The position numbers were made by a program, and so were the translations under genes. From the IMG/VR virus record IMGVR_UViG_3300044712_000810, positions 62,001 to 126,000 of that record: a stretch of DNA of 64,000 bases; one strand, 5' to 3'. Positions 4,614 through 62,620 of this stretch are shown piece after piece. Every line of letters starts with the position of its first letter. The first letter of the stretch is position 1. Below the pieces are notes generated by a model that was given only the letters and a program-made list of their open reading frames with translations, was not told the origin of the DNA and did not search any database.

Positions 4614-4907
4614 TTACATATTAGGCATGTTAATTGAATAATTAATCTTATTCATTGCGTGTTTAAAATTTTGCATTGATTTAATAGATTTTAATATCTC
4701 TAAAATTTGTATTGCTGGAATCTTTGCTACACTAATATATGTAGGTGGATCATTTGCTACGCGGACGAATCCACGTGCATATAAAAGATTATCAATGTCT
4801 GTAAGTAACATCCCAAAGACCTTACGGTCATGACCTTTTTTTGGTTCAAAAATTACTGTGGATGCCATATATTTTCCAACTTTAATAGGGAATGATATAT
4901 TGAACAC
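4614..4907 (-). CDS. Hypothetical protein
   Basis: 97-aa ORF co-oriented with neighbours. Confidence 0.6.
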   Translation of the reverse strand: MFNISFPIKVGKYMASTVIFEPKKGHDRKVFGMLLTDIDNLLYARGFVRVANDPPTYISVAKIPAIQILEILKSIKSMQNFKHAMNKINYSINMPNM

Positions 4908-14214: not shown

Positions 14215-15933
14215 CTATGCTAATGGAACACTACCATCAGTTAACATTGGTGATGGCCCAATATCTTTTGATGCTACACTTGTTGAACTTGTTGATGGAG
14301 TATCCGGAACTGAATTCTCTAAAGGATTTGGTGCTGTTGGCTGTTTAGTTCCGGCAACTTCTGATGAATTTTGTGTTGTATTCGGTTTAGATTCAGATGG
14401 CTTATTATCATTACCTTCTGCTAATTTTTTCTCCACATTAAATGTATTTTTTGCTGCATCTGCAATAGCACCAGAAGCTGAATCAGCTTCAGCTCTAGGT
14501 CTATTGGCCGGCGTTATTGGATTATTAGTTGGAGATTCAATAGGTTGTAATGATGCTTCTGGTGAATCATCATATGGCATCATTGAACGAACAATATCAC
14601 CAAGAGTTGGCATAACAATAGTAACAGGCGAAGGAGGTTGTTTAGATCCTTGAACTGATACTGAGTTGTAAATATTTTTATCATATGCCATTTTATTATT
14701 ATCTGGATTAACAACAGAAAATCCATCAACTATATTTTGAAAATCAATAGAAACATCAACTGTAAGTGGTTGACGATATATATTGAAACTAGTATCTGAT
14801 CCACCACGACGAAGTGTAATTGATGTAATTGCGCCGATATTTATATGATTAAGACCATGTGCCCGAATACTTACAAATGGTGGGTTTCCATATGTTATGC
14901 CATCGGTTGTTTCTGGAGCAGCTAATAATATTAAATACATTAATGGTCTAATAATTGCTTGTTGAATAGCATCAGGATGACCATATGGTGAAAATAATTT
15001 TAAGTTAACACTTATGTTTGGTGAATATGCAGATGAACTCCAAACTTTAGGAAAACTTATTTGGGTTCCATTAATAGCCATATTACCAATAATTTTTGTA
15101 GCATGTTCTGCTATATCACCGATTCTAGCATTTGTTCCTTCTGAAAATCCAGTAACCGGCGAAATTAAACCAGCACCAGCTCTTGCACCTTGTCCTACTT
15201 TTGTAGATGCATAATTAACAGCATCCACACCAAGTTGTTGGCCTTGTTGACCAAACGATTTAAGAATATCACGAATACTACGCGATCCTTGTAACATTCT
15301 ATTAATTGCACCTTCAACTAAGTTAGTCTCATACGAGTTAACAATGTTATCAGATGCAGTAGTTTCATCAGTTGCAAATAATTTAAGACCATAATAATCT
15401 GATTTAGGCAATCCATAATGCGCACATTTCTTTTTAAAATTATCAATAGCAACTTTATATTGAATCTTTGGTAAAAAACCTTCAACACCAGCACCTGCTA
15501 ATTTTCCAGAATTAGCCATATCAAATATATCAAAAGTAAATGCACAAGGAATCATATCAATAACAGTCATCTTCTTTGTATAATAATCCGATAACCAATT
15601 ATTAGGATCTACTTGCGGACGATATCTCATTGGCATACCAATACGTACTAATCCACCACCATAACTATTAGAAGCAGAATCACGAGTACTTACAGAGTTT
15701 ATAACTTTAGATCCTGCATTAGTATTCATCGCAACTTGTTGTCCTGGACTACCGGATACAAGTGAACTTTGTCCTGTATTTTCAGCAACTTGTTTAATGT
15801 TATTATCATTATTATAATTTAATTGTTGATTTGATTGTTTTAAAGATCTTAAATCATTTGTATATTGTCGTTTTTCTGTTGATGATAATTCATTAAGTGA
15901 AGTTCCACCTTTGACTTCATCAAATGGTGCCAT
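14215..15933 (-). CDS. Baseplate/tail-tube junction protein (gp48/gp54-like)
   Basis: PKVWSSSAYSPNISVNLKL, PPFVSIR..IGAITSITL, PLTVDVSIDF resemble tube-initiator folds; follows the tape measure gene. Confidence 0.5.
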   Translation of the reverse strand: MAPFDEVKGGTSLNELSSTEKRQYTNDLRSLKQSNQQLNYNNDNNIKQVAENTGQSSLVSGSPGQQVAMNTNAGSKVINSVSTRDSASNSYGGGLVRIGMPMRYRPQVDPNNWLSDYYTKKMTVIDMIPCAFTFDIFDMANSGKLAGAGVEGFLPKIQYKVAIDNFKKKCAHYGLPKSDYYGLKLFATDETTASDNIVNSYETNLVEGAINRMLQGSRSIRDILKSFGQQGQQLGVDAVNYASTKVGQGARAGAGLISPVTGFSEGTNARIGDIAEHATKIIGNMAINGTQISFPKVWSSSAYSPNISVNLKLFSPYGHPDAIQQAIIRPLMYLILLAAPETTDGITYGNPPFVSIRAHGLNHINIGAITSITLRRGGSDTSFNIYRQPLTVDVSIDFQNIVDGFSVVNPDNNKMAYDKNIYNSVSVQGSKQPPSPVTIVMPTLGDIVRSMMPYDDSPEASLQPIESPTNNPITPANRPRAEADSASGAIADAAKNTFNVEKKLAEGNDNKPSESKPNTTQNSSEVAGTKQPTAPNPLENSVPDTPSTSSTSVASKDIGPSPMLTDGSVPLA

Positions 15934-22047: not shown

Positions 22048-23925
22048 TTATCCACCAAAGAAAGGCATAAATGGTAAAACATCTGGATCATTACCATAAT
22101 TATTTTCACCAATATCATACATATCACGTTCGCCAGTTGTTATAAATAGATCTGGATTAAGCGATGCATTGCGAGGATTATATGTTCCTTTCTTAGGATC
22201 TGAAAGACCTATAAGCTCACGCATATTGGTTGAAAAGTTATTTGTAATTTCCCTATTTGATAAATTAAGCATTGGCATAATTTCCAAAGCTTTTCTTTTT
22301 CTTGTATATGCACAGAAACAGGCAGCCATAAATAAGTCACTAAAACTATTTGATCTGATTGTTCCTGCAGATGAACGTTCAATTGATGACATTTGGTTTA
22401 TTAATTCTTGCGATTTAATACACTTTGGATTTCCATCAATCGCTTCTTTTAAACAACCAATCATCATATCTTTTGAAATACCAGTAGTCATAATACCTGG
22501 TTCTTTATCATTATCTGAATACATAAATGGAGAATAATCAAATTCTCTAACATGATATAATAAGTGTTCAATTGGTGCAAGACCAATAGTGTTCTTTTCA
22601 ATTGCTAATATAATTCTTGGACCGACTTGACGATATAACCATTGAAATACTTCATGGATAATATCACCATATTTAGCAAAACTTCCAAGGCGAACTCCGA
22701 TTTCAGCAATCTGATTAAAGTCTTTAAAGCTAAATATTTGAATAGCGTTAAATGCACCTTTAATCGATCTAGCTGTATCTACACCAATTAAATAATAATC
22801 TAATGGATCAATATATTCAGAAAATACTTTCATTGTTGATCCATATTTAAATGGAACATTCTGAACTGAATTAACAGCTTCAAGTTTTGATAATTGATCG
22901 TCGTCGAAAATACAGTTAGATGTACCAACGAATATTAAGTCAAGTTCTTGGTTAATCTTACGTTGGTCTGAAAGTTCCTGACATTGTTCTTTATACCATT
23001 TTTCAGTTTTACGAGGATCTTCACTCCAATGATATTGAACTTTAATAAAACTGTTCTTACTTTCATCATGTGCAATTTCATCAATATCAACATCGGATCT
23101 CCAATCTTCATGTAAAGGATCATCTGGATCAGCAATAAACATATCTTCGGAATCTACAGCTTTTGACCAACGATCATAAAACCATTCACCGTTACCCGCG
23201 ATACCGTTTGGAGTACTTGTAACAAATTGAAAATATGGATAATTGTTTGATATTGCTTGGTCTTTAGCAGTTGCTAATGTTTGTTGTGCAGAACCGAAAA
23301 TTTCTCTCATGTGAGGTATGAATGCTGCTTCGTCGATATATAAACATGAACTTGTAAGTGAACGAGCAATAGTTGATGGGTGTGCGGTTGATGAAGGATA
23401 GAAAGAGTCAAGACGTGAACCATTACGAAGTTCAAGATATGTTAATCTTTCACTCTTTGTATTTTGTACACAAGTCCATCTTAACCAATCTGGCAAATTA
23501 TTAATAACAAACTTAACCATTGCTAAGTTTTTAATGGCAGGACCTTTTCTAAAGTTAAGAATAAGAGGTTTATTATATGGAAAGAAAATAGTGGACCATG
23601 CAAGAATACACGCAGCAATAGTGGACTTACCTAACTGACGTGAAGCCATGAATACACATTTATGATATCTATTTAATACGCGCACTACGCGTCTTAATTT
23701 CGGTCTTAACATTTCTTCTGAATATTGACGCATACCACCAGTTTCTTCTATATATACATAGTTTTGAATAAAATAAAGTGGATTACGTCTGCATTGAAGC
23801 CACTCAAGGGCATAATGATCATTAATTTTTATATTAGTATCTTTTGATAACATATCCAAACATTTTAAATCTGTTGTTGATAAATCATCATCTTCAATAC
23901 TTAAATCTATACTTTCACGAAGCAT
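22048..23925 (-). CDS. Terminase large subunit (T4 gp17-like)
   Basis: ASRQLGKST, LYIDEAAF, TSTPNG, nuclease IGVDTA and DLFMA motifs. Confidence 0.92.
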   Translation of the reverse strand: MLRESIDLSIEDDDLSTTDLKCLDMLSKDTNIKINDHYALEWLQCRRNPLYFIQNYVYIEETGGMRQYSEEMLRPKLRRVVRVLNRYHKCVFMASRQLGKSTIAACILAWSTIFFPYNKPLILNFRKGPAIKNLAMVKFVINNLPDWLRWTCVQNTKSERLTYLELRNGSRLDSFYPSSTAHPSTIARSLTSSCLYIDEAAFIPHMREIFGSAQQTLATAKDQAISNNYPYFQFVTSTPNGIAGNGEWFYDRWSKAVDSEDMFIADPDDPLHEDWRSDVDIDEIAHDESKNSFIKVQYHWSEDPRKTEKWYKEQCQELSDQRKINQELDLIFVGTSNCIFDDDQLSKLEAVNSVQNVPFKYGSTMKVFSEYIDPLDYYLIGVDTARSIKGAFNAIQIFSFKDFNQIAEIGVRLGSFAKYGDIIHEVFQWLYRQVGPRIILAIEKNTIGLAPIEHLLYHVREFDYSPFMYSDNDKEPGIMTTGISKDMMIGCLKEAIDGNPKCIKSQELINQMSSIERSSAGTIRSNSFSDLFMAACFCAYTRKRKALEIMPMLNLSNREITNNFSTNMRELIGLSDPKKGTYNPRNASLNPDLFITTGERDMYDIGENNYGNDPDVLPFMPFFGG

Positions 23926-45968: not shown

Positions 45969-47204
45969 ATGGCAAAGAATGAACAAACTGAAAACAGAGT
46001 CGAAATGCCATTGGCAGATCTGATTCAAAACTTTGTCGTTCCGAACTGCTATTTGCAGTGCGACAAAGACACGTCAGATAAAGGCGGCGTGGCAATTCCA
46101 TACATCGTGTCGAAGCCTGGCGCCGGTAAGACATCAGTTATCGAGGCGCTTTGCAAGAACAATGGATGGGGACTCATGTCCGTTCACTTTGCCCTCAAGC
46201 CTATCGAAGAGCTTGGTGGCATTCCGAACTTCACCAAAGTTCACATCAACGGCAAGGAAGTTTCAGGTACCGAATGGACCGTTACCGATATGGTAACGAA
46301 ACTGTGGGAGATGCACAACGAAACCAAAGAGGTTTTGGCGAAGGACGGGTCAACCGTTACCGAACCCAAGTACAAAATCATCATACTGCTGTATGACGAT
46401 GCTCACCTTTGCGGTCCCGGACACATGGCATTCTTCTACGAACCTTTCACCGAAAGAACAATTCGTGGGCACAAGTTGCCTCCGAACTGCGCACAAGCAA
46501 TGGCAGGAAACGACAGCAACAAAGCAGGCGCAAAAGCCTTCTTCTCCGCTATCACCAACCGTTGCGCTCGTCTCTATGCAAGAGCAGAATTCAAACCTTG
46601 GAAAGAAATGTTCGCTCTTCCCAAGCAGGTTCACCCGGCAGTTGTTTCTTTCCTCGGAAAGGACAACTATCAGTTCCAGTTCTTCCATGGCGAAGAAGTT
46701 CAGGATTCTCCTTGGGCATCACCCAGATCCTGGACTCGTCTCGCAAACTTCATCGAGGCGTATGAAAAGTGGAATGGTGGAAAAGCAATGCCTGCTTCCG
46801 AACTGCGCTTCTACGCTGAAGCTCACGTCGGAAAATCTGCAGGAAACGAATTTTCCAACTACTATTCCGTATTCACCAAATTCAATCTGGATCGTGATCT
46901 CGATAACTTCAAGAACTTCCAACTTCCCTCAAACGATATCGACAAATACGCATTCGCATTTGCGATCACCGCGCATTACTGCGGCAACAAGGAACTGAGA
47001 AAGGTCAAGAGCGAAAACTTCGCTCACATCCTTTTCCGTTACCTTGAAGACTGCCGTGAAGTCGGCATCGTCATGATGAAGGATATCATGTCCCTCGAAA
47101 AGATCGTCAAAGATGAAAACATCTTCGGCGCTGTCGCGAAGCATCTGGAAAAACTGAAGCCCACTTGCGTTACCGCGCTGTTGCAAGAAGTCGCTCGCCT
47201 GTAG
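45969..47204 (+). CDS. MoxR-like AAA+ ATPase
   Basis: Walker A SKPGAGKT, GGIP, Walker B LLYDD, AGN, AITNR, ASPRSW. Confidence 0.85.
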   Translation: MAKNEQTENRVEMPLADLIQNFVVPNCYLQCDKDTSDKGGVAIPYIVSKPGAGKTSVIEALCKNNGWGLMSVHFALKPIEELGGIPNFTKVHINGKEVSGTEWTVTDMVTKLWEMHNETKEVLAKDGSTVTEPKYKIIILLYDDAHLCGPGHMAFFYEPFTERTIRGHKLPPNCAQAMAGNDSNKAGAKAFFSAITNRCARLYARAEFKPWKEMFALPKQVHPAVVSFLGKDNYQFQFFHGEEVQDSPWASPRSWTRLANFIEAYEKWNGGKAMPASELRFYAEAHVGKSAGNEFSNYYSVFTKFNLDRDLDNFKNFQLPSNDIDKYAFAFAITAHYCGNKELRKVKSENFAHILFRYLEDCREVGIVMMKDIMSLEKIVKDENIFGAVAKHLEKLKPTCVTALLQEVARL

Positions 47205-47212
47205 GATAATAC

Positions 47213-48553
47213 ATGAGTGCGAATCTGGCGAAAGTCAAAAAAATAATCGAACAAGCCAGATTGAAGCTGATCCGTAAAGAATACTTATTCTTCGGTCTCT
47301 TCTGCGGCAAGTTCGTGTGGAAGCATTACGATTTCGGTGATGAAATGAAGGATATCGAAGGTTGTGTCTATCTTCCGAACGACCCAAAGAATCCTGATAA
47401 AGAAGTGATGGATAACGCAATCCATCTCAATGATAGATTCATTTCAAAAGACGATTATACATATTTGAATCTTTGCGATCTTGTACTGCATGAATCGCTA
47501 CACATCATAAACAAACACGGAATACGTCGCGGATCGAGAGATCCAAAACTTTGGAATATTGCAGGTGACCATGTCATCGACAGATTCCTCCGTGATTTGA
47601 ATATGACTAAACCATATCATAGGTGGAACGTAATTCCAGAACTCGACAAAGCACTTCCAAAGTGTTCTGCCGAGGAAGCCTATATGTGGCTTGAAAAAAA
47701 TCAAAAGAAATTCACAATATCACAAGATCCTGCATCAGGACAAATTACTATTACAGATGGGCAGGGAAATACATTCCATGTCAATCCATCGCAAGGTGGT
47801 GTGACATCTGGTAATGTTGATCCCAAAGTAAAACAAATGGTTGAAGAACTTGTTGCAGGCGCCAGAGCAATTCACGAGTCATCGAAAGATCGTGGTGTTG
47901 GTTCCGCAGCAATTTCTGCATATCTTGATGATGTTCTTAAGGTTGTGATTCCATGGCAAGAACTGCTTGAAATCGCGATCAAAACAAATATCATAATGAA
48001 ACCGGACGATTATGGTTGGGCAAACCCCAACAAACGCCTCAGATGTCATGGCCTTGTGCTTCCTGGAAGCATAATGACAGAAACAAATGAAGGCGTTGGA
48101 ACTCTCATAGTTCACGTAGACACTTCTGGATCAGTTAACGACACACAGCTTAAAGAAGCTGCTGGAATAATCTGCGAATCTATGAGATATTTCAAAACAA
48201 TTAAACTCATTACTGCCGACTGGAACATTCAACAGGAAGTTGATTTCGACAGCGACAGTATTAGTGATTTCCTTAACTTCTGTCAAAAAGAAGGATTTAA
48301 AGGTCGTGGCGGCACATCACATAAACCAACGTTTGATCGAATCAATGAAATCTGGGAAGACAACATTGATGATCTCTCGATGGTAATTTCAATAACCGAT
48401 GGATATTCTGATATTGAACAAATATATACAGTATATCCATTCATAACAAACCACGTTCCGTTGGTTTTCCTTCTCAATGGCGGATCGAGGGAACTAAATC
48501 TCAATCCTGATATTGGGAAAATAAAACAAATCGTCATGGACGATGCAAAATAA
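47213..48553 (+). CDS. Metallopeptidase-VWA protein (DUF2201-like)
   Basis: LHESLH (HExxH), WNIAGDHVID, VDTSGSV MIDAS motif, GRGGT, ITDG. Confidence 0.85.
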   Translation: MSANLAKVKKIIEQARLKLIRKEYLFFGLFCGKFVWKHYDFGDEMKDIEGCVYLPNDPKNPDKEVMDNAIHLNDRFISKDDYTYLNLCDLVLHESLHIINKHGIRRGSRDPKLWNIAGDHVIDRFLRDLNMTKPYHRWNVIPELDKALPKCSAEEAYMWLEKNQKKFTISQDPASGQITITDGQGNTFHVNPSQGGVTSGNVDPKVKQMVEELVAGARAIHESSKDRGVGSAAISAYLDDVLKVVIPWQELLEIAIKTNIIMKPDDYGWANPNKRLRCHGLVLPGSIMTETNEGVGTLIVHVDTSGSVNDTQLKEAAGIICESMRYFKTIKLITADWNIQQEVDFDSDSISDFLNFCQKEGFKGRGGTSHKPTFDRINEIWEDNIDDLSMVISITDGYSDIEQIYTVYPFITNHVPLVFLLNGGSRELNLNPDIGKIKQIVMDDAK

Positions 48554-54015: not shown

Positions 54016-54669
54016 TTAATTCCCAGCAGTATAAATTTTACTAGTCAAGCGATAATTAGAATCATAATTATAAGTATAACTATGTATTATGGTTGTTCCA
54101 TTAAAATCATAAAAGGTTTCTTTTGAAACAAATCCATGTGAATTATATAGATATTTAATTAATCTTCCAGTTGAAAATGTAATAGTATCAACAAATCCAT
54201 TCGCATTATATGTTAATGTTGTTGATGATGTATCTGCAAAAAGTGTATCCTGTGTTATATATGTAAAACACGATGATGGATAAAATGGAAAAAGGTCAGC
54301 ACGTTGTAAGTGTTTTTCTTGATCAGATGTGTGTGTTACGATATTTGTATTTAATGTATTTAATTTATCTGGTGTTAATGGAGATCCTTTTCCCCAATAT
54401 GTAATAGAATAAGTATTTCCTGATTCAGATTCGTTAAAAAATATATCTGCATTTTTATAGTTTATAAAAAACGACCCACTTTGCGGTGGATATGAAGTCG
54501 TTTGCGATAATCCTATGATTACTGGTGATACTTTAAGTTCACCATTATCTGGCATTTCAGTTAATTTTAAACTATAAGGAGGATCAACCGGAACTATAAG
54601 TTGTTCAGTTATTTCCACTAATTGCCAGATACCATCAGGTGATTTTCTTAATGGAACTAATGGAAACAT
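54016..54669 (-). CDS. Probable virion protein with C-terminal YD/RHS-like repeats
   Basis: LTYNANGFV..YLYNSHGFV..YNYDSNYRL. Confidence 0.5.
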   Translation of the reverse strand: MFPLVPLRKSPDGIWQLVEITEQLIVPVDPPYSLKLTEMPDNGELKVSPVIIGLSQTTSYPPQSGSFFINYKNADIFFNESESGNTYSITYWGKGSPLTPDKLNTLNTNIVTHTSDQEKHLQRADLFPFYPSSCFTYITQDTLFADTSSTTLTYNANGFVDTITFSTGRLIKYLYNSHGFVSKETFYDFNGTTIIHSYTYNYDSNYRLTSKIYTAGN

Positions 54670-54680
54670 GTAAGTCTCCC

Positions 54681-55757
54681 TTAAATATTTGGATTAAATT
54701 TAAAACCTGAAGTAAGTACTTGTATACAAGCATCTACAATGTCATCATCTAACTTGATTCCTCGTTCTTCATTAATTATTGACATAGCCTTATCAATACC
54801 AAGACCAGCACGATACGGTCTATGATTTGTAACTGCTTCAACAACATCAGCAACTGAAATTATTCTAGATAAGAAATGTATTTCATCACCTTTCAGTCCT
54901 AATGGATAACCGGAACCATCTAATCTTTCATGATGTTGATGTATAATTTCATGAACCGGTATCGTATATTTAAATGGAATCTTTTCAACTATTTTAGCAC
55001 CAACTTCTGAATGTAATTTAATAAAATTCATCTCATGTTCAGTTAATTTTCCTGGACGGACTAAGATCTCTGTTGGTGTATAAAATTTGCCAATATCATG
55101 AAGTATTGAAGCTATCTCGAGGCATTCCATATCTTCATCATTTAATTTAAACAATTTCCCAATTTCAAGAGAAAGATGTTTAACTCTCATTTGATGACCA
55201 TATGTATATGGATCTTTAATTTCACCCATTTTCGAAAGTGTTTCAACAGTTGAAACTATAACATCTTTCGAATAATGATTTGTTTTTGTTAATCGCATTT
55301 CAGTATCTTCTAAAACTATAATCGCTCGTTTTAAAGCATCTATATATTTTTTTTCTTTAGATAAATCAACAATAATTCCATAAATTAAATCATTATGTAA
55401 TAACATTGAATCTTTAGCTTCAAATTCTTTACCTGTTTTAAAATTAATAAAAACAGACTCGAGTGAATAGTATTTATTCTTTTTTAATTCTTCAATTGCT
55501 GTAAGTCGAACATTTGAATCGACATATACTTTCGATGAATTAAAATCGTAATCTATCATATGATTAACATCATTATAACCAAATAACTCACAAAAAAATG
55601 AGTTAGCATATAATATATCACCATCAATTGATGTAACATAAACACCAATCTCGGCATTATCAAAAACATCGAAAAACTTTTTTGGGATGCATTTATGTTC
55701 GCAATTAACATTAAGAACATCTCGAAGTTTTTCTAACAACTGTTTTTTATTTTGCAT
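54681..55757 (-). CDS. PAS + HD-GYP cyclic dinucleotide phosphodiesterase
   Basis: PAS FDNAEIGVY..DGDILYANSFFCELFGY; KDPYTYGHQMRV, LHDIGK, HHERLDGSGYPLGL, ADVVEA. Confidence 0.9.
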   Translation of the reverse strand: MQNKKQLLEKLRDVLNVNCEHKCIPKKFFDVFDNAEIGVYVTSIDGDILYANSFFCELFGYNDVNHMIDYDFNSSKVYVDSNVRLTAIEELKKNKYYSLESVFINFKTGKEFEAKDSMLLHNDLIYGIIVDLSKEKKYIDALKRAIIVLEDTEMRLTKTNHYSKDVIVSTVETLSKMGEIKDPYTYGHQMRVKHLSLEIGKLFKLNDEDMECLEIASILHDIGKFYTPTEILVRPGKLTEHEMNFIKLHSEVGAKIVEKIPFKYTIPVHEIIHQHHERLDGSGYPLGLKGDEIHFLSRIISVADVVEAVTNHRPYRAGLGIDKAMSIINEERGIKLDDDIVDACIQVLTSGFKFNPNI

Positions 55758-55770
55758 AATAATCTCACTT

Positions 55771-55792
55771 GAGGGGAGGTTTCCCTCCCCTC
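55771..55792 (-). terminator. Terminator hairpin
   Basis: GAGGGGAGG-GAAA-CCTCCCCTC; near-identical to the 58765 hairpin. Confidence 0.7.
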
Positions 55793-55796
55793 GAAG

Positions 55797-56021
55797 TTAC
55801 GCGGGTTTAGGTATTCCTACTATTGGTTTGTATACATATTTTTCATAACCAGATGATACTTTTTTAGCAGTATCTTTTTTTAATCCTACATCTCGTAATC
55901 TTGAATATATATGAAGCGGACTTCCATAATGATTAACAGCATTATGAACATTACTTTTTACTTTTTGATAAGTATCACCTAACCATCCTTCATTAATCAT
56001 ATGGTTAGATATTGAGATCAT
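55797..56021 (-). CDS. Hypothetical protein
   Basis: 74 aa, MINE motif. Confidence 0.6.
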   Translation of the reverse strand: MISISNHMINEGWLGDTYQKVKSNVHNAVNHYGSPLHIYSRLRDVGLKKDTAKKVSSGYEKYVYKPIVGIPKPA

Positions 56022-58234
56022 TATGATTTCTCTTCAAGTGCCTCTACTCTTGCTGCAAGTTCTTGAATTGCTTTAATTATTGGAGAAATAAATTCATTAT
56101 AACGCAATCCATAGATATCATTAGCTTCATCATATACAAAACCAGCAAATGTAGATGAACATTTATTGATTAAAGTTTTTACTTCTTGTGCGATAAGACC
56201 ATAATGTTTTTGGTTGTCATTATTGTCCTTCCACTTATACGAAACAGGTCTTAATTCAAGAACAAAGTTAAGACCAAGATCTGAATTCTCGATATTTCCT
56301 TTCTTTCTTAAATCTGAAGTTTGAATTGTAGCGTTTGTTGCATAGATATCTTTCCATCTAATTCCAGGTGTACCTAAGCTATAAGTATCATCTGTTCCAG
56401 CAACAATTGCGCCTTCAACTGTTAATTTACCATTATTTGATGTTGTACCAACAAGTAAATCACCAGTATTATTAATTCTTACTTGTTCTGTGAATGTTCC
56501 GCCGGCAATACGTTTACCAAATGAAATAATAGAAGATGCATTATTATTATGTGATAATTGAAGTGAATTTGAATTTGCTTCAACTGTAATATCACCATCT
56601 GTTGCGCTTTGGAATATATTAAGTTTTCTATTATTACCATTAAGGTAGATATCACCAGTTGTATTAATAAAACCTGTTGTTCCGGCAGTTCCACCAACAC
56701 ACAATTTACCATCATTGGTAATCTTAACTTGTGTTGTGAATACGTCGGATGAGTTAATACTACCAAACAGTATTTCAGATGTTGCGGAAGTATTATGTGC
56801 AATTCTAATATCAGTTAATTCTTCATCGATAACAACGTTTCCGTTTGTTGAATCTTTTACAAAAATAACTTTATTTTCAGAACCTGTAAATAATACATTA
56901 CCATTAATGTTTAATCTTTCACTATTAGTAAAAGTATTTAAAGATAAGTTTCCAGTAGGACCTAATAACATTTCTGTTGTAAATGCTCCAGCACTATCTT
57001 TACGTCCAAACACCATACCAGCATTTGTTTTACTACTATGTGAAAGATACAATACACCACTGTTTTGATCGTCTGCAAAAATATCAATGTTACCGTTTGT
57101 TGTATCTTCTTTAATTCTAATCAATGGTAAGTTTGAAACAAGTTCAATATTACCATTAACAGTAAGATGTGACTTTTCAACTTCTGTGTTGATACTCATT
57201 TTACCACTACTAAATACACGAGCGGCCTCAACACCGTTACATGCAAAAGAAATTATACCTTTGCCTGGTGTATAAAAACCAGTATCATTGTCATTATCAC
57301 CATAGTCAAAGTATAATCTTGGCGCAGTAGCATCAATAGATGAACCAGATGTAATACCAACACGACCAGTGAATCTATCACCAGTCTTTTTAGCATAAAC
57401 AGCGGCAGCATGGAATGGACTTACTGCGCGATTTGATAAAGTTCCATCAATAACTTCTTGACGAGTACCTAAAGTAATTATACCAGCAGTAGTTTCACTT
57501 GAAAGTGGTATATTAGCAATTTTACTCCAATCAATTGATGTTACTTCATTATTTGTGTGATTGTGAGGAGGAAGCTGTTCAATTGGCATTTTACCAGTAC
57601 TATCAAGACTTGCGGTACCGTTATTCATACCAATGATTGATTTTAATGATAATGGTGAAACTGCGCGGGTATTATCTAAACCAGCCATAGTTTCAACATC
57701 TGTTGCTAACTCAACAATACCTGGAGTTGTTTGTGATGCACTTGGAATATTTTTCAGTTTAGACCAATCAATATCCACAAGAGTAGAATCACCATGAGTA
57801 TGTGAGTTATCATTAATCGCAACAGTTAATGTAGCATCGGCCATATTATTGAATATGGCAGAACCAGAAACATCACCAGTCAATGTAAGTCTTGGACTAG
57901 GAATGTTTGTTAGCATTGTAAAATCGACACTTCCCATCTCTCCACTTAAGTGTGAGTGAGGTGGAAGTTGTGCCATAGGAAGTTTTGAACTTTCGTCAAG
58001 TGATGCAATACCATTCGCAATACCACGAATACCATTTAGACTTTCACATGTAACAACCGCGTCTGTTGTTCCGGCAAAAGTTTCTTCGGTAGTCGCAAGT
58101 TTAACAATACCTGTAACAGTAGTTGTAGCACTTTTAAGGTGATCATTGTGAATAGTATCTCCGGCTTGGAATTCACTTAATGATGTAACACTTCCAGCTG
58201 TAAATACCCCTCTAAATGGTCTTTTATCAGCCAT
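56021..58234 (-). CDS. Tail fibre with C-terminal peptidase S74 intramolecular chaperone
   Basis: Fibre repeats GIVKLAT/GIVELAT/GIITLGT; TSDLRKKGNI..LRPVSYKW..YGLIAQEV..LRYNEFISPIIKAIQEL. Confidence 0.85.
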   Translation of the reverse strand: MADKRPFRGVFTAGSVTSLSEFQAGDTIHNDHLKSATTTVTGIVKLATTEETFAGTTDAVVTCESLNGIRGIANGIASLDESSKLPMAQLPPHSHLSGEMGSVDFTMLTNIPSPRLTLTGDVSGSAIFNNMADATLTVAINDNSHTHGDSTLVDIDWSKLKNIPSASQTTPGIVELATDVETMAGLDNTRAVSPLSLKSIIGMNNGTASLDSTGKMPIEQLPPHNHTNNEVTSIDWSKIANIPLSSETTAGIITLGTRQEVIDGTLSNRAVSPFHAAAVYAKKTGDRFTGRVGITSGSSIDATAPRLYFDYGDNDNDTGFYTPGKGIISFACNGVEAARVFSSGKMSINTEVEKSHLTVNGNIELVSNLPLIRIKEDTTNGNIDIFADDQNSGVLYLSHSSKTNAGMVFGRKDSAGAFTTEMLLGPTGNLSLNTFTNSERLNINGNVLFTGSENKVIFVKDSTNGNVVIDEELTDIRIAHNTSATSEILFGSINSSDVFTTQVKITNDGKLCVGGTAGTTGFINTTGDIYLNGNNRKLNIFQSATDGDITVEANSNSLQLSHNNNASSIISFGKRIAGGTFTEQVRINNTGDLLVGTTSNNGKLTVEGAIVAGTDDTYSLGTPGIRWKDIYATNATIQTSDLRKKGNIENSDLGLNFVLELRPVSYKWKDNNDNQKHYGLIAQEVKTLINKCSSTFAGFVYDEANDIYGLRYNEFISPIIKAIQELAARVEALEEKS

Positions 58235-58309: not shown

Positions 58310-58555
58310 CTAATTTATATAACGCGTTTTTATAACATCCACACCATCAATACGTGTTTTGTTAAATTGAACATCCTTTAAAAGTCTTAATAATCGATAC
58401 TGTTCCATAATTTGAGTTCGGAGCATATCATAATCAACCATTTGTGGATCTGAATATTTCAATACATCTTGAATACGTTCAATATTTAATATTATTCGAT
58501 CCAACCATTTACCCATTCTAATAAATTTTTGTTCCGCGCGACTTGTTACTGCCAC
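58310..58555 (-). CDS. Hypothetical protein
   Basis: 81-aa ORF. Confidence 0.6.
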   Translation of the reverse strand: MAVTSRAEQKFIRMGKWLDRIILNIERIQDVLKYSDPQMVDYDMLRTQIMEQYRLLRLLKDVQFNKTRIDGVDVIKTRYIN

Positions 58556-58764: not shown

Positions 58765-58784
58765 GGGGGAGGTTTCCCTCCCCC
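58765..58784 (-). terminator. Terminator hairpin after fibre gene
   Basis: GGGGGAGG-GAAA-CCTCCCCC. Confidence 0.7.
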
Positions 58785-61297: not shown

Positions 61298-62620
61298 TTA
61301 TTGGCCTAAATACTTTTTAGCATCTATGTCCATATTATCTAAATCAAGAACCTTAAGGGCAAAATACTCGGCACTATCTTTTCTGCCACTTTTCTGAAAT
61401 ACTCGAAAAATATTTTTAATGATAGACTTATTACCTTCACCAAATTTACCATTTATAGCTAATGCCTTTTCCAAAAAACTAGAAGAACTTTTAAATTCTC
61501 CACCTTCAGCATAAGCCATTGCAATATTATAATATAAACCTTCATCATTCTTCTTAATTGTTATTGCTTTTTCATATTCACGGATAGCATCACGCCATTT
61601 ACCCTGTTTACGATAAATTATTCCAAGTTTATTAAATACTTCAATATCGCTATCTTCATACTCATTATTTCTATATGCAATAGCTCTTGAATAATATTTA
61701 AGTGCAAGATCTGGATTCTTTTCTTCTGTCATTTCTGCAATCTTTTTAACCAAAACAACAATTTCATGAATAGCATCTTGCGCTGCTAATTTAATCGCTT
61801 CATTAAAATATGACTCAGCAACATCAACTTTACCAAGATCAAGATTTATTTTACCAATTTGCATTTTTCGTTGTGTATTTAAAGGAGATAATCGTTCTAA
61901 TTTATTTAGATATTTTAAAACTTTGTCTGTATCGTTTTTAACAGAATAAGCTTCCGCAAGCTTCTTAATCGGTTCTAAATATAATACCGATTGTCTATGC
62001 GCAAGATCATAATATTCAATAGCTTTATCCGGGTTATTTAAATGATAAAGTTCAATATCACCATATAAAATATTTCCAGTCGGTGAATTAGGTTTTTTAC
62101 TGAGTATTTGTTCGACAATTAATTGAGCGACATCATATTTTCCAAATTCCATATTAGTTTTAGCTTTATCAATAAGTTCACTCAATTCACCGTGTGGTTC
62201 TATAACATTCGATAATTTTTCAACAAGAACATCAACAGAAACTGGTTTAATTACAAAATTTTTAGCACCAAGTTCATGATAAAGTGCTAATATATTTTTA
62301 TGAGTCTCTGTAGTAACTATAATGGTTTTAACATTTTTAAAATTTGATGAAATAGTTCCCAAAATTGAAGTTACAAAACTATTTGAAAAAATCATATCAA
62401 ACACAAAAATGATATTATTACTATCACATCGTTTAAGTTTTGAATACAAGTCAAGATCATTTGATGCAAATATAATTCGATCTAAAGTTGCACCAATATA
62501 CTTAGTTACTGTAATTTTTAATAATTTGAAAAAACTACTATTTTCACCAAGATAAAATATATATCCATTATTTGAATGAAGATAATCGAAAACTGCTTTG
62601 TCGTATTTAGTGTTTTTCAT
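61298..62620 (-). CDS. Response-regulator receiver + TPR protein
   Basis: Receiver: FVFDM (Asp), VTTE, GAKNFVIKPVS; multiple TPRs including FNKLGIIYRKQGKWRDAIREYEKA and YYNIAMAY. Confidence 0.8.
   Translation of the reverse strand: MKNTKYDKAVFDYLHSNNGYIFYLGENSSFFKLLKITVTKYIGATLDRIIFASNDLDLYSKLKRCDSNNIIFVFDMIFSNSFVTSILGTISSNFKNVKTIIVTTETHKNILALYHELGAKNFVIKPVSVDVLVEKLSNVIEPHGELSELIDKAKTNMEFGKYDVAQLIVEQILSKKPNSPTGNILYGDIELYHLNNPDKAIEYYDLAHRQSVLYLEPIKKLAEAYSVKNDTDKVLKYLNKLERLSPLNTQRKMQIGKINLDLGKVDVAESYFNEAIKLAAQDAIHEIVVLVKKIAEMTEEKNPDLALKYYSRAIAYRNNEYEDSDIEVFNKLGIIYRKQGKWRDAIREYEKAITIKKNDEGLYYNIAMAYAEGGEFKSSSSFLEKALAINGKFGEGNKSIIKNIFRVFQKSGRKDSAEYFALKVLDLDNMDIDAKKYLGQ

What the first reader, a model, noticed from the sequence alone, without database searches (positions are those of the whole stretch)
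54681..55757. Intact PAS-HD-GYP phosphodiesterase between virion genes
Seen: complete HD and GYP motifs and an N-terminal PAS domain. Established: HD-GYP enzymes hydrolyse c-di-GMP, and some hydrolyse cGAMP. Inference: a sensor-controlled enzyme that rewires host biofilm/motility signalling or degrades cyclic-dinucleotide immune signals (anti-CBASS). Such enzymes are uncommon phage cargo.
Basis: partly seen in the sequence, partly recalled or inferred. Interest (0 to 1): 0.65.

Follow-up and report, generated by a model that had tools for sequence, protein, structure and literature searches.

The report
Phage-encoded PAS-sensor cyclic-di-GMP phosphodiesterase
A complete 315-kb jumbo phage carries its own intact, sensor-linked HD-GYP enzyme of the type that destroys the bacterial messenger c-di-GMP; this is rare in phages but was already predicted for jumbo phages, and no experiment has yet tested one.

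Summary
Window 54681-55757 is one ORF on the minus strand (358 aa). It has an N-terminal PAS domain, a long stalk helix and a complete HD-GYP domain. Seven of the eight metal ligands of the reference enzyme PmGH are present. The eighth, the third-metal Glu, is Tyr, which predicts a two-metal site.

The guanine-reading motif is the canonical RxxR, not the RxxQ signature of cGAMP-specific enzymes. The model predicts a parallel homodimer.

The gene belongs to the phage. The genome is a complete 314,837-bp record with terminal repeats, and the gene's composition matches the phage. The only known relative keeps the gene at the same place. Its catalytic domain is 71% identical, against 50-63% for the neighbouring genes.

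Only the upstream flank is confidently a virion gene (a tail fibre).

Most likely this is an active, PAS-gated c-di-GMP phosphodiesterase, possibly also active on 3'3'-cGAMP. It lowers host cyclic-dinucleotide levels. Whether the benefit is rewiring of host behaviour or immune evasion (CBASS) cannot be decided here, because the host is unknown.

HD-GYP enzymes in jumbo phages were already noted by Iyer et al. 2021, so this is a new member of a known kind.

The parts
54681..55757 (-). Whole gene, 358 aa: PAS, stalk helix, HD-GYP phosphodiesterase. ATG start and TAA stop.
   Evidence: ORF list and translation; Pfam; AF2 model with mean pLDDT 87.3.
55689..55703 (-). N-terminal C19-x3-C23 pair just before the PAS domain. 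Both Cys are kept in the related phage protein although this segment is only 35% identical. Possible redox or metal site (speculative).
   Evidence: Alignment A1; per-segment identities; this stretch has low pLDDT.
55365..55679 (-). PAS domain, residues 27-131: five-stranded sheet with flanking helices.
   Evidence: PAS_8 E 8e-8; model secondary structure; Foldseek matches to solved PAS domains, e.g. 2gj3, 8px4, 2r78, with TM by target 0.75-0.78.
55215..55364 (-). Stalk (S-helix), residues 132-181, joining PAS to the catalytic domain. It forms the predicted parallel dimer axis.
   Evidence: Single helix 132-181 in the model; in-register contacts 142:142, 145:145, 149:149, 152:152, 156:156, 167:167 in the dimer model.
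54711..55214 (-). HD-GYP catalytic domain, residues 182-349. Key residues: H188, H220-D221, H249, H275-H276, D304, GYP 283-285, R313xxR316.
   Evidence: HD_5 E 1.7e-38; alignments to 5z7c and 4mcw; these columns are invariant in 54 homologues; Foldseek 9rbz TM by target 0.84-0.86, rmsd 2.4-3.0.
55771..55792 (-). GC-rich hairpin with a GAAA loop in the 39-nt gap upstream of the gene. An identical 18-nt core lies at 58766-58783.
   Evidence: Sequence; 2 exact copies in the window against 0 expected; 3 exact copies in the genome.
55797..56021 (-). 74-aa ORF overlapping the tail-fibre stop codon. No family match.
56021..58234 (-). Tail fibre, 737 aa, with a C-terminal S74 intramolecular chaperone domain. 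This is the upstream neighbour.
   Evidence: 25 tail PHROGs, best E 4.5e-25; Peptidase_S74 E 1.4e-12.
54016..54669 (-). Downstream neighbour, 217 aa, starting 11 nt after the enzyme's stop codon. YomF_N-like and beta-rich. Conserved next to the enzyme gene in the related phage (61.5% identity).

Best explanation
The phage encodes its own active, dimeric, cytoplasmic HD-GYP cyclic-dinucleotide phosphodiesterase, with a PAS domain that gates it through a coiled-coil stalk. The preferred substrate is most likely c-di-GMP. The two-metal site is expected to open it mainly to pGpG. 3'3'-cGAMP is a possible second substrate. The gene sits in the tail-gene block and is probably transcribed with it. 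Its product collapses the infected cell's c-di-GMP pool, which switches off c-di-GMP-dependent matrix or surface-glycan production and other c-di-GMP outputs, to the phage's benefit (release and spread of progeny, loss of receptor on infected cells). Shown here: domain architecture, intact catalytic and substrate-binding residues, fold, predicted dimer, phage ownership, conservation. Inferred: activity, substrate, timing, the signal the PAS domain reads, the physiological benefit.
For: All columns matching PmGH ligands H189, H221, D222, H250, H276, H277 and D305 are invariant in 54 homologues, the phage protein included (mapping). The motif HHExh(D/N)GxGYP is met at residues 275-285 (for the definition). 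R313xxR316 is the canonical guanine-reading Rxx(K/R) motif; in PmxA, RxxQ gives cGAMP specificity and Q518R restores c-di-GMP activity. Six of the eight c-di-GMP contacts described for DvhD have like residues here: Y184, L238, Y284, V309, R313, Y315. The position of PmGH Glu185 is Tyr184, which predicts a binuclear site. The model has pLDDT 87.3, and the best structural matches are solved HD-GYP domains. The homodimer scores ipSAE 0.50 against a best control of 0.00. That mark was reached by 20 of 30 proteins solved as pairs and 1 of 23 solved as single chains; the runs agree in at least 74% of contacts and partner pLDDT is at least 80. Phage ownership rests on a complete 314,837-bp record with terminal repeats, gene GC of 28.3% and GC3 of 14.2% within the phage's range with typical codon usage, and synteny with contig L001. 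The catalytic domain is 71% identical between the two phages, against 36% for PAS and 50-63% for neighbouring genes. The two phage proteins form a pair (support 100) on a long stem outside the bacterial sequences. There is no GGDEF, EAL or PilZ elsewhere in the phage. Tight spacing to both neighbours and absence of the genome's abundant promoter-like consensus in this block come. Phages are known to interfere with c-di-GMP signalling and to depend on c-di-GMP-controlled surface glycans (abstracts of PMC8085984 and PMC8669472).
Against: No activity was measured. The host is unknown, so it is not known whether it uses c-di-GMP at all. The RxxR signature does not exclude cGAMP: V-cGAP3 is the best sequence match in the PDB (E 6.7e-36) and also has RxxR. 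Two DvhD contact positions differ (K582 is M243, E668 is R332), and the KPG lysine of PmGH is Arg234. Expression timing is inferred from gene order only, and no late promoter could be defined. An enzyme made late has little time to rewire host behaviour. No PAS cofactor signature was found, so 'gated' is by analogy.
Confidence: 0.5

Rival explanations
1. Immune evasion: the enzyme degrades a cyclic-dinucleotide alarm signal made by a host CBASS system. The signal would be 3'3'-cGAMP from a DncV-type cyclase, or c-di-GMP from a CdnE-type cyclase that feeds a STING-TIR effector. Degrading it prevents abortive infection.
For: HD-GYP enzymes of jumbo phages were predicted to do this (PMC7824862). 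The best sequence match among solved structures is the Vibrio cGAMP phosphodiesterase V-cGAP3. The DvhD HD-GYP pocket can also take 3'3'-cGAMP. Viral HD-GYP genes were acquired many times independently (at least 3 origins forced by well-supported branches, 17 changes on the tree), as is typical of counter-defence cargo. From general knowledge, unverified here: some bacterial STING systems use c-di-GMP, and CBASS is often triggered by late structural proteins, so late expression would fit.
Against: The enzyme lacks the RxxQ signature of cGAMP-specific enzymes. The host and its defence systems are unknown. The gene is long resident and vertically kept next to structural genes, not in an accessory anti-defence island. 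A PAS sensor is unusual for known anti-CBASS proteins, which are small constitutive nucleases or sponges (general knowledge).
Confidence: 0.3
2. Non-catalytic c-di-GMP receptor: like DvhD, the HD-GYP domain only binds c-di-GMP and passes on a signal.
For: The closest solved protein with the same PAS/HD-GYP layout, DvhD (9rc0, 9rbz), is a receptor that does not hydrolyse c-di-GMP.
Against: DvhD has lost the HD dyad and the HH pair (alignment). The phage protein keeps them all, and they are invariant in its 54 nearest homologues. There is no output domain or partner.
Confidence: 0.04
3. Ring nuclease against cyclic oligoadenylates of type III CRISPR systems.
For: Suggested in general terms for jumbo-phage HD-GYPs.
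Against: Characterised HD-GYP domains hydrolyse c-di-GMP and some cGAMP, but not c-di-AMP or other cyclic nucleotides. The guanine-reading RxxR motif is present.
Confidence: 0.03
4. Artefact: a bacterial gene joined to the phage contig by mis-assembly, or a decaying passenger gene.
For: All close full-length homologues other than P0002 are bacterial.
Against: The record is complete with terminal repeats. The same gene lies at the same place in an independent contig from another sample, with neighbours 50-63% identical. Composition is phage-like. There are no stops and all catalytic residues are kept. The nearest bacterial sequences are only 32-51% identical and spread over many phyla.
Confidence: 0.02

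Closest known systems
HD-GYP enzymes of jumbo phages (Iyer et al. 2021, Viruses 13:63, PMC7824862; example QDB70412.1)
   Same: An HD-GYP phosphodiesterase carried by a jumbo phage. This genome also has the MoxR ATPase plus metallopeptidase-vWA pair and the S74 tail-fibre chaperone that the paper ascribes to its group 2 phages.
   Different: That paper gives only a prediction and describes no PAS-fused form, so far as I read it. QDB70412.1 was not compared here. This gene sits in the tail block and is conserved with it.
DvhD of Desulfovibrio vulgaris, cytoplasmic PAS/HD-GYP module (PDB 9rc0, 9rbz; PMC13090378)
   Same: The same PAS, stalk helix, HD-GYP layout and a parallel dimer through the stalk. 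It is the best Foldseek match (E 2.1e-13, TM by target 0.84). Most c-di-GMP contact residues are shared.
   Different: DvhD is a membrane protein with a periplasmic dCache domain, has lost the catalytic metal ligands and acts as a receptor. The phage protein is soluble and short and keeps the ligands.
PmGH of Persephonella marina (PDB 4mcw/4mdz), GAF-HD-GYP c-di-GMP phosphodiesterase
   Same: Seven of eight metal ligands, the GYP tyrosine and the Rxx(K/R) guanine-reading motif.
   Different: PmGH has Glu185 and a three-iron centre and goes on to GMP; here that position is Tyr184. The sensor is GAF, not PAS. The KPG lysine is Arg here.
V-cGAP3 of Vibrio cholerae (PDB 5z7c), 3'3'-cGAMP phosphodiesterase
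   Same: Best sequence match in the PDB (E 6.7e-36). Tyr at the Glu185 position and RxxR, as here.
   Different: V-cGAP3 has a tandem degenerate HD-GYP plus an active HD-GYP and no PAS. Identity in the domain is moderate, so substrate cannot be transferred.
Bacterial PAS-HD-GYP one-component proteins (many phyla)
   Same: The same architecture at 33-41% full-length identity. 6,343 hits with E <= 0.001 among the 8,000 candidates scored.
   Different: The phage pair is a separate long-branched lineage with a two-residue insertion after helix 249-258, an Arg in the KPG motif and an N-terminal CxxxC.

Membership tests
HD-GYP domain (class II c-di-GMP phosphodiesterase; Pfam HD_5/HD, ProSite PS51832) | HD dyad and the motif HHExh(D/N)GxGYP | tested here: met
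   H220-D221; the motif at residues 275-285; definition from bioRxiv 10.1101/2021.11.05.467447.
HD-GYP domain | Ligands of the two core metals (PmGH H189, H221, D222, H250, H276, H277, D305) | tested here: met
   H188, H220, D221, H249, H275, H276 and D304 align to them and are invariant in 54 homologues.
HD-GYP domain, trinuclear subclass (PmGH type) | Acidic third-metal ligand (PmGH Glu185) | tested here: not met
   Tyr184 at that column, as in V-cGAP3 and in all 54 aligned homologues. The role of Glu185 is taken from PMC12072042.
HD-GYP domain | Substrate-binding residues: GYP tyrosine, Rxx(K/R), lysine of KPG | tested here: met
   Y284 and R313xxR316 are present. The KPG lysine is Arg234, a conservative change.
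HD-GYP domain | All-alpha fold superposable on solved HD-GYP domains | tested here: met
   Foldseek: 9rbz TM by target 0.84-0.86 with rmsd 2.4-3.0; 4r8z TM 0.78-0.80. Model pLDDT is mostly 87-98 per 10-residue block in this domain, with one dip to 78 at residues 311-320.
HD-GYP domain | Metal-dependent hydrolysis of c-di-GMP | not testable with these tools
   Needs the purified protein.
cGAMP-specific HD-GYP (GAP, PmxA type) | RxxQ in place of Rxx(K/R) | tested here: not met
   R313-P-Y-R316; signature from bioRxiv 10.1101/600031.
PAS domain | PAS fold (five-stranded antiparallel sheet with helices) and a family match | tested here: met
   PAS_8 at 32.4 bits against a cut-off of 21.8; strands 38-43, 47-51, 96-105, 111-121, 124-131; Foldseek matches to solved PAS domains.
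Cofactor-binding PAS (LOV/flavin, haem) | Conserved cofactor-binding residue kept in both phage proteins | tested here: inconclusive
   By eye on alignment A1 there is no LOV-type Cys motif and no His conserved between P0001 and P0002 in the PAS helices. No dedicated test was run.
DvhD-type degenerate HD-GYP receptor | Loss of catalytic metal ligands with c-di-GMP binding retained | tested here: not met
   The ligands are retained here and lost in DvhD (alignment; PMC13090378).
RpfG family (REC-HD-GYP response regulators) | N-terminal receiver domain | tested here: not met
   No Response_reg match. Several other viral contigs do carry REC-HD-GYP.
Known anti-CBASS proteins (Acb1 nuclease, Acb2 sponge) | Homology or shared fold with those families; rescue from CBASS | not tested
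   Not compared by sequence here. The HD-GYP fold differs from the fold of those proteins by general knowledge. A functional test is needed.

The most novel reading that the evidence does not exclude
The enzyme is a virion-carried protein, made with the tail, packed and ejected with the DNA. It would strip c-di-GMP or cGAMP from the next host at the moment of entry and so pre-empt cyclic-dinucleotide immunity. Its PAS domain and the conserved N-terminal CxxxC pair (four Cys at the dimer axis) would act as a redox or metal switch that turns it on in the cytoplasm. The evidence does not exclude this: the gene lies in a conserved tail-gene block without the genome's abundant promoter motif, and late synthesis would otherwise leave little time to act. 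Nothing here shows packaging.
Probability: 0.08. Interest if true: 0.8.

Novelty: new member of a known kind. Interest (0 to 1): 0.42.

Why it matters
My literature searches found no phage HD-GYP that has been characterised biochemically. This is a clean candidate: a complete jumbo-phage genome, an intact active site, conservation in a second phage, and a sensor domain. It could show whether phages erase c-di-GMP or cGAMP to control host behaviour or to escape cyclic-nucleotide immunity, and whether a phage enzyme can be gated by a cellular cue. It would add a new enzyme fold to the known phage tools against nucleotide signalling. The idea is already in the literature as a prediction, so the value lies in making it testable, not in a new concept.

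Tried and rejected
1. Independent check of the assembly with reads. The only run that holds the stretch is the probable source, a rhizosphere metagenome. Read laying placed nothing with about half of the run read. This is uninformative, not negative.

2. More relatives of the phage, to ask whether the gene is core or accessory. Three searches found nothing: P0001 alone in viral contigs, and the conserved neighbour alignment A3 in viral contigs and in metagenome contigs. The word search with the 266-aa neighbour found only L001's protein and one protein on a 1.6-kb contig. The lineage is known from two contigs only.

3. Host or donor inference. The 80 best bacterial loci are spread over many phyla at 32-51% identity. 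The tree leaves the phage pair on a long stem outside an unresolved bush. The large terminase is at most 25% identical to any GenBank phage. The host stays unknown.

4. Late promoter. T4-type TATAAATA and a candidate ATTAAATAA are not enriched upstream of genes. The sigma-70 scan is at chance level, 59 found against 55.7 expected. Expression timing therefore rests on gene order.

5. Microcystis phage MaAM05 as a cultured-phage precedent. Rejected, because the matching gene lies beside secE, nusG, rplK, coaD and trxB, so that region looks bacterial.

6. Alternative genetic code because of a CTA-anticodon tRNA. Rejected for this region. TAG ends 86 of 499 ORFs, coding density is 92.6% under code 11, and the gene has no in-frame stop.

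7. The NCBIfam NosR-family hit (106 bits against a cut-off of 400) is not membership.

8. Two papers could not be read by PMC id. Their preprints were read instead.

Full report
**1. What is there**

The reported interval 54681-55757 is one open reading frame of 358 codons on the minus strand. The plus strand of the interval is full of stops.

- Pfam finds HD_5 at residues 174-339 (E 1.7e-38), HD at 185-308 (E 3.6e-18) and PAS_8 at 27-73 (E 8e-8). All three are above their curated cut-offs.
- NCBIfam adds HDIG and a sub-threshold PAS S-box. Its NosR-family hit (106 bits, cut-off 400) is not membership.
- An AlphaFold2 model built on 54 homologues has mean pLDDT 87.3. It shows a short N-terminal helix, a PAS fold (residues 24-131), one long helix (132-181) and an all-helical domain (182-349).
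- The best structural matches are solved HD-GYP domains: DvhD 9rbz (E 2.1e-13, TM by target 0.84-0.86), PmGH 4mcw and PA4781 4r8z. Solved PAS domains match the N-terminal part.

**2. Is the active site intact?**

Alignment to PmGH (4mcw) and V-cGAP3 (5z7c) places the following residues on seven of the eight metal ligands of PmGH: H188, H220, D221, H249, H275, H276 and D304. All seven columns are invariant in the 54 closest homologues.

- The defining motif HHExh(D/N)GxGYP is met at residues 275-285.
- The eighth PmGH ligand, Glu185, decides between a three-metal and a two-metal centre and influences whether pGpG is taken on to GMP (PMC12072042). Here it is Tyr184, as in V-cGAP3 and the whole subfamily.
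- I mapped the c-di-GMP contacts described for DvhD (PMC13090378) through the profile alignment. Six positions are matched by like residues:
  - Y523 to Y184
  - L577 to L238
  - Y621 to Y284
  - M646 to V309
  - R650 to R313
  - Y652 to Y315
- Two positions differ: K582 to M243 and E668 to R332.
- DvhD itself has lost the HD and HH ligands and is a non-hydrolysing receptor. The phage protein has not lost them.

**3. Substrate**

PmGH reads one guanine of c-di-GMP with R314 and K317, the Rxx(K/R) motif. In PmxA the fourth residue is Gln, which makes the enzyme prefer 3'3'-cGAMP, and Q518R switches it back to c-di-GMP (bioRxiv 10.1101/600031).

The phage protein has R313-P-Y-R316, the canonical form. 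This argues against a cGAMP-specific enzyme and for c-di-GMP. It does not exclude cGAMP, because the Vibrio V-cGAP enzymes carry Arg at that position. Characterised HD-GYPs do not cut c-di-AMP or other cyclic dinucleotides.

**4. Quaternary structure and the sensor**

- Two copies are predicted to form a parallel dimer through the PAS N-cap and sheet and an in-register stalk. The score is ipSAE 0.50 against a best control of 0.00. That mark was reached by 20 of 30 proteins solved as pairs and 1 of 23 solved as single chains. The runs agree in at least 74% of contacts, and partner pLDDT is at least 80.
- This is the arrangement of apo DvhD, so the pass may partly reflect likeness to solved structures.
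- I found no cofactor signature in the PAS domain. What it senses is unknown.
- A C19-x3-C23 pair just before the PAS domain is kept in the one related phage protein although that segment is only 35% identical. In a dimer this would bring four Cys near the axis. A redox or metal role is speculation.

**5. Whose gene is it?**

- The genome is an IMG/VR virus record of 314,837 bp with direct terminal repeats, estimated 100% complete. It has 33% G+C and 32 tRNA genes.
- The window holds a T4-like large terminase, a tail-tube-like protein, a tape-measure/transglycosylase protein, a UvsX-like recombinase and tail fibres. The terminase is at most 25% identical to any GenBank phage.
- The closest homologue of the enzyme, P0002 (55% identity over 99% of the length), lies on a 16.4-kb JGI metagenome contig, L001.
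- L001 is collinear with the window. After the enzyme gene come homologues of the 217-, 68-, 115-, 266- and 426-aa genes, at 50-63% identity.
- Between the two phages the catalytic domain is 71% identical, the stalk 48%, PAS 36% and the N-terminus 35%. The catalytic part is thus held more tightly than the surrounding genes.
- The gene's G+C (28.3%), third-position G+C (14.2%) and codon usage lie within the phage's own range.
- On a tree of 108 HD-GYP domains the two phage proteins pair with support 100 on a long stem (0.82 changes per site) outside a poorly resolved bacterial bush.

A mis-assembled host fragment is therefore very unlikely. The donor and the host cannot be named.

**6. Surroundings**

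- Upstream on the same strand lie a 737-aa tail fibre with an S74 chaperone domain, a 74-aa ORF that overlaps its stop codon, and a 39-nt gap filled by a GC-rich GAAA-loop hairpin.
- Downstream, 11 nt after the stop codon, starts a 217-aa YomF_N-like protein, followed by conserved unknowns. One of these has a weak baseplate match.
- In L001 the homologue of the window's 81-aa ORF (58310-58555) directly abuts the enzyme gene. The tail-fibre and 74-aa pair is therefore not at that position in the relative.
- 'Between virion genes' is thus true for one flank in this phage and is not a conserved feature.
- A promoter-like consensus (TTTTAATATT, about ten bases, CATATAGAAATA) stands before many small genes elsewhere in the genome. 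Its core ATATAGAAA occurs 83 times genome-wide. In the window the full consensus occurs only three times, none near the enzyme gene.
- I could not define a late promoter. Co-transcription with tail genes is inferred from spacing and strand only.
- The phage has no GGDEF, EAL or PilZ gene and no second HD-GYP.

**7. How common is this in phages?**

- No PHROG family matches the protein at E <= 0.001.
- tblastn finds matches in 29 of 50,697 GenBank phage records. Of these, 28 are unannotated faecal-metagenome contigs. The other is Microcystis phage MaAM05, where the gene sits beside secE, nusG and rplK and looks bacterial.
- A two-pattern scan of IMG/VR found 27 contigs, several above 150 kb. 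Architectures vary: REC-HD-GYP (L006, L008, L018, L020, L027), PAS_4-HD-GYP (L014, on a 545-kb contig) and stand-alone forms.
- On the tree these viral genes are scattered among bacterial ones (17 changes; at least 3 forced by well-supported branches), which points to repeated capture.
- Iyer et al. 2021 had already listed HD-GYP enzymes across the jumbo phage groups and predicted that they counter cyclic-nucleotide immunity.
- I found no paper that characterises a phage HD-GYP.

**8. Mechanism and verdict**

I commit to an active, dimeric, PAS-gated cyclic-dinucleotide phosphodiesterase of the two-metal class that prefers c-di-GMP. It is made by the phage, probably together with its tail genes, to empty the infected cell's c-di-GMP pool. 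My estimates:

- About 0.8 for the biochemical identity.
- About 0.5 for the whole statement, including the physiological role.
- About 0.3 for the main rival, degradation of a CBASS alarm signal (cGAMP, or c-di-GMP in STING-type systems).

The sequence cannot separate the two, because the host is unknown and the enzyme may take both substrates. Precedents for phage interest in c-di-GMP exist: phage peptides that bind a diguanylate cyclase, and a c-di-GMP-dependent glycan used as the phage N4 receptor (abstracts). The receptor-only, ring-nuclease and artefact readings are each unlikely, for the reasons given under the rival explanations.

This is a new member of a known kind. It is a solid and rare example and worth an assay, but it is not a new concept.

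Noticed in passing
window 55773-55790 and 58766-58783 (minus strand); similar hairpins upstream of the genes at 4614-4907, 14215-15933 and 22048-23925: GC-rich intercistronic hairpins with GAAA-type loops stand between genes of the structural block. Two have an identical 18-nt core. These two bracket the segment that holds the 67-aa and 81-aa ORFs, the tail fibre and the 74-aa ORF. The tail-fibre and 74-aa pair is missing at this position in the related contig L001. They could be RNA-stability or terminator elements, or marks of a swappable tail-fibre cassette.
   Followed up: partly
whole genome (G000); in the window at about 21444 (+), 40208 (-) and 45897 (+): A strong promoter-like consensus (TTTTAATATT, about ten bases, CATATAGAAATA) precedes many mostly small genes. 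Its 8-mers are 14-17 times enriched in upstream gaps, and its core ATATAGAAA occurs 83 times genome-wide. It is nearly absent from the structural block of the window.
   Followed up: partly
genome G000:C1:290747-290821, outside the window: ARAGORN calls a tRNA with anticodon CTA (amber-suppressor type) among 32 phage tRNAs. TAG still ends 86 of 499 ORFs and code 11 gives 92.6% coding density, so no recoding is evident.
   Followed up: partly
window 45969-47204 (+) and 47213-48553 (+): A two-gene island on the opposite strand: an ATPase (phrog_1297) followed by a metallopeptidase (DUF2201_N) plus vWA-like protein. It sits behind one copy of the promoter-like consensus. The ATPase gene has 48% G+C and 57% third-position G+C, against 33.5% and 23% for the genome's genes. 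Both genes are conserved in L001 (46-48% identity). The pair matches the MoxR-vWA chaperone pair that Iyer et al. describe for group 2.2 jumbo phages.
   Followed up: partly
window 55689-55703 (-), residues 19-23 of the enzyme: A CxxxC pair ahead of the PAS domain is conserved in the only related phage protein. It is not a general feature of the bacterial homologues.
   Followed up: partly
L006, L008, L018, L020, L027 (REC-HD-GYP); L014 (PAS_4-HD-GYP); L015, L024, L026, L031 (stand-alone): Other IMG/VR contigs, several of 150-545 kb, carry HD-GYP genes with receiver or PAS domains. A receiver-fused phage enzyme would need a host kinase. Whether these contigs are truly viral was not checked.
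   Followed up: partly
L113 (MW495066.1 30559-39137, Microcystis phage MaAM05): The region around its HD-GYP gene (annotated as cGAMP phosphodiesterase 3) holds secE, nusG, rplK, coaD, trxB and a tRNA. This looks like bacterial chromosome within a record filed as a phage.
   Followed up: no
window 61298-62620 (-): A 440-aa protein with strong TPR repeats (E 3e-23) and a faint receiver-domain match, inside the structural block.
   Followed up: no
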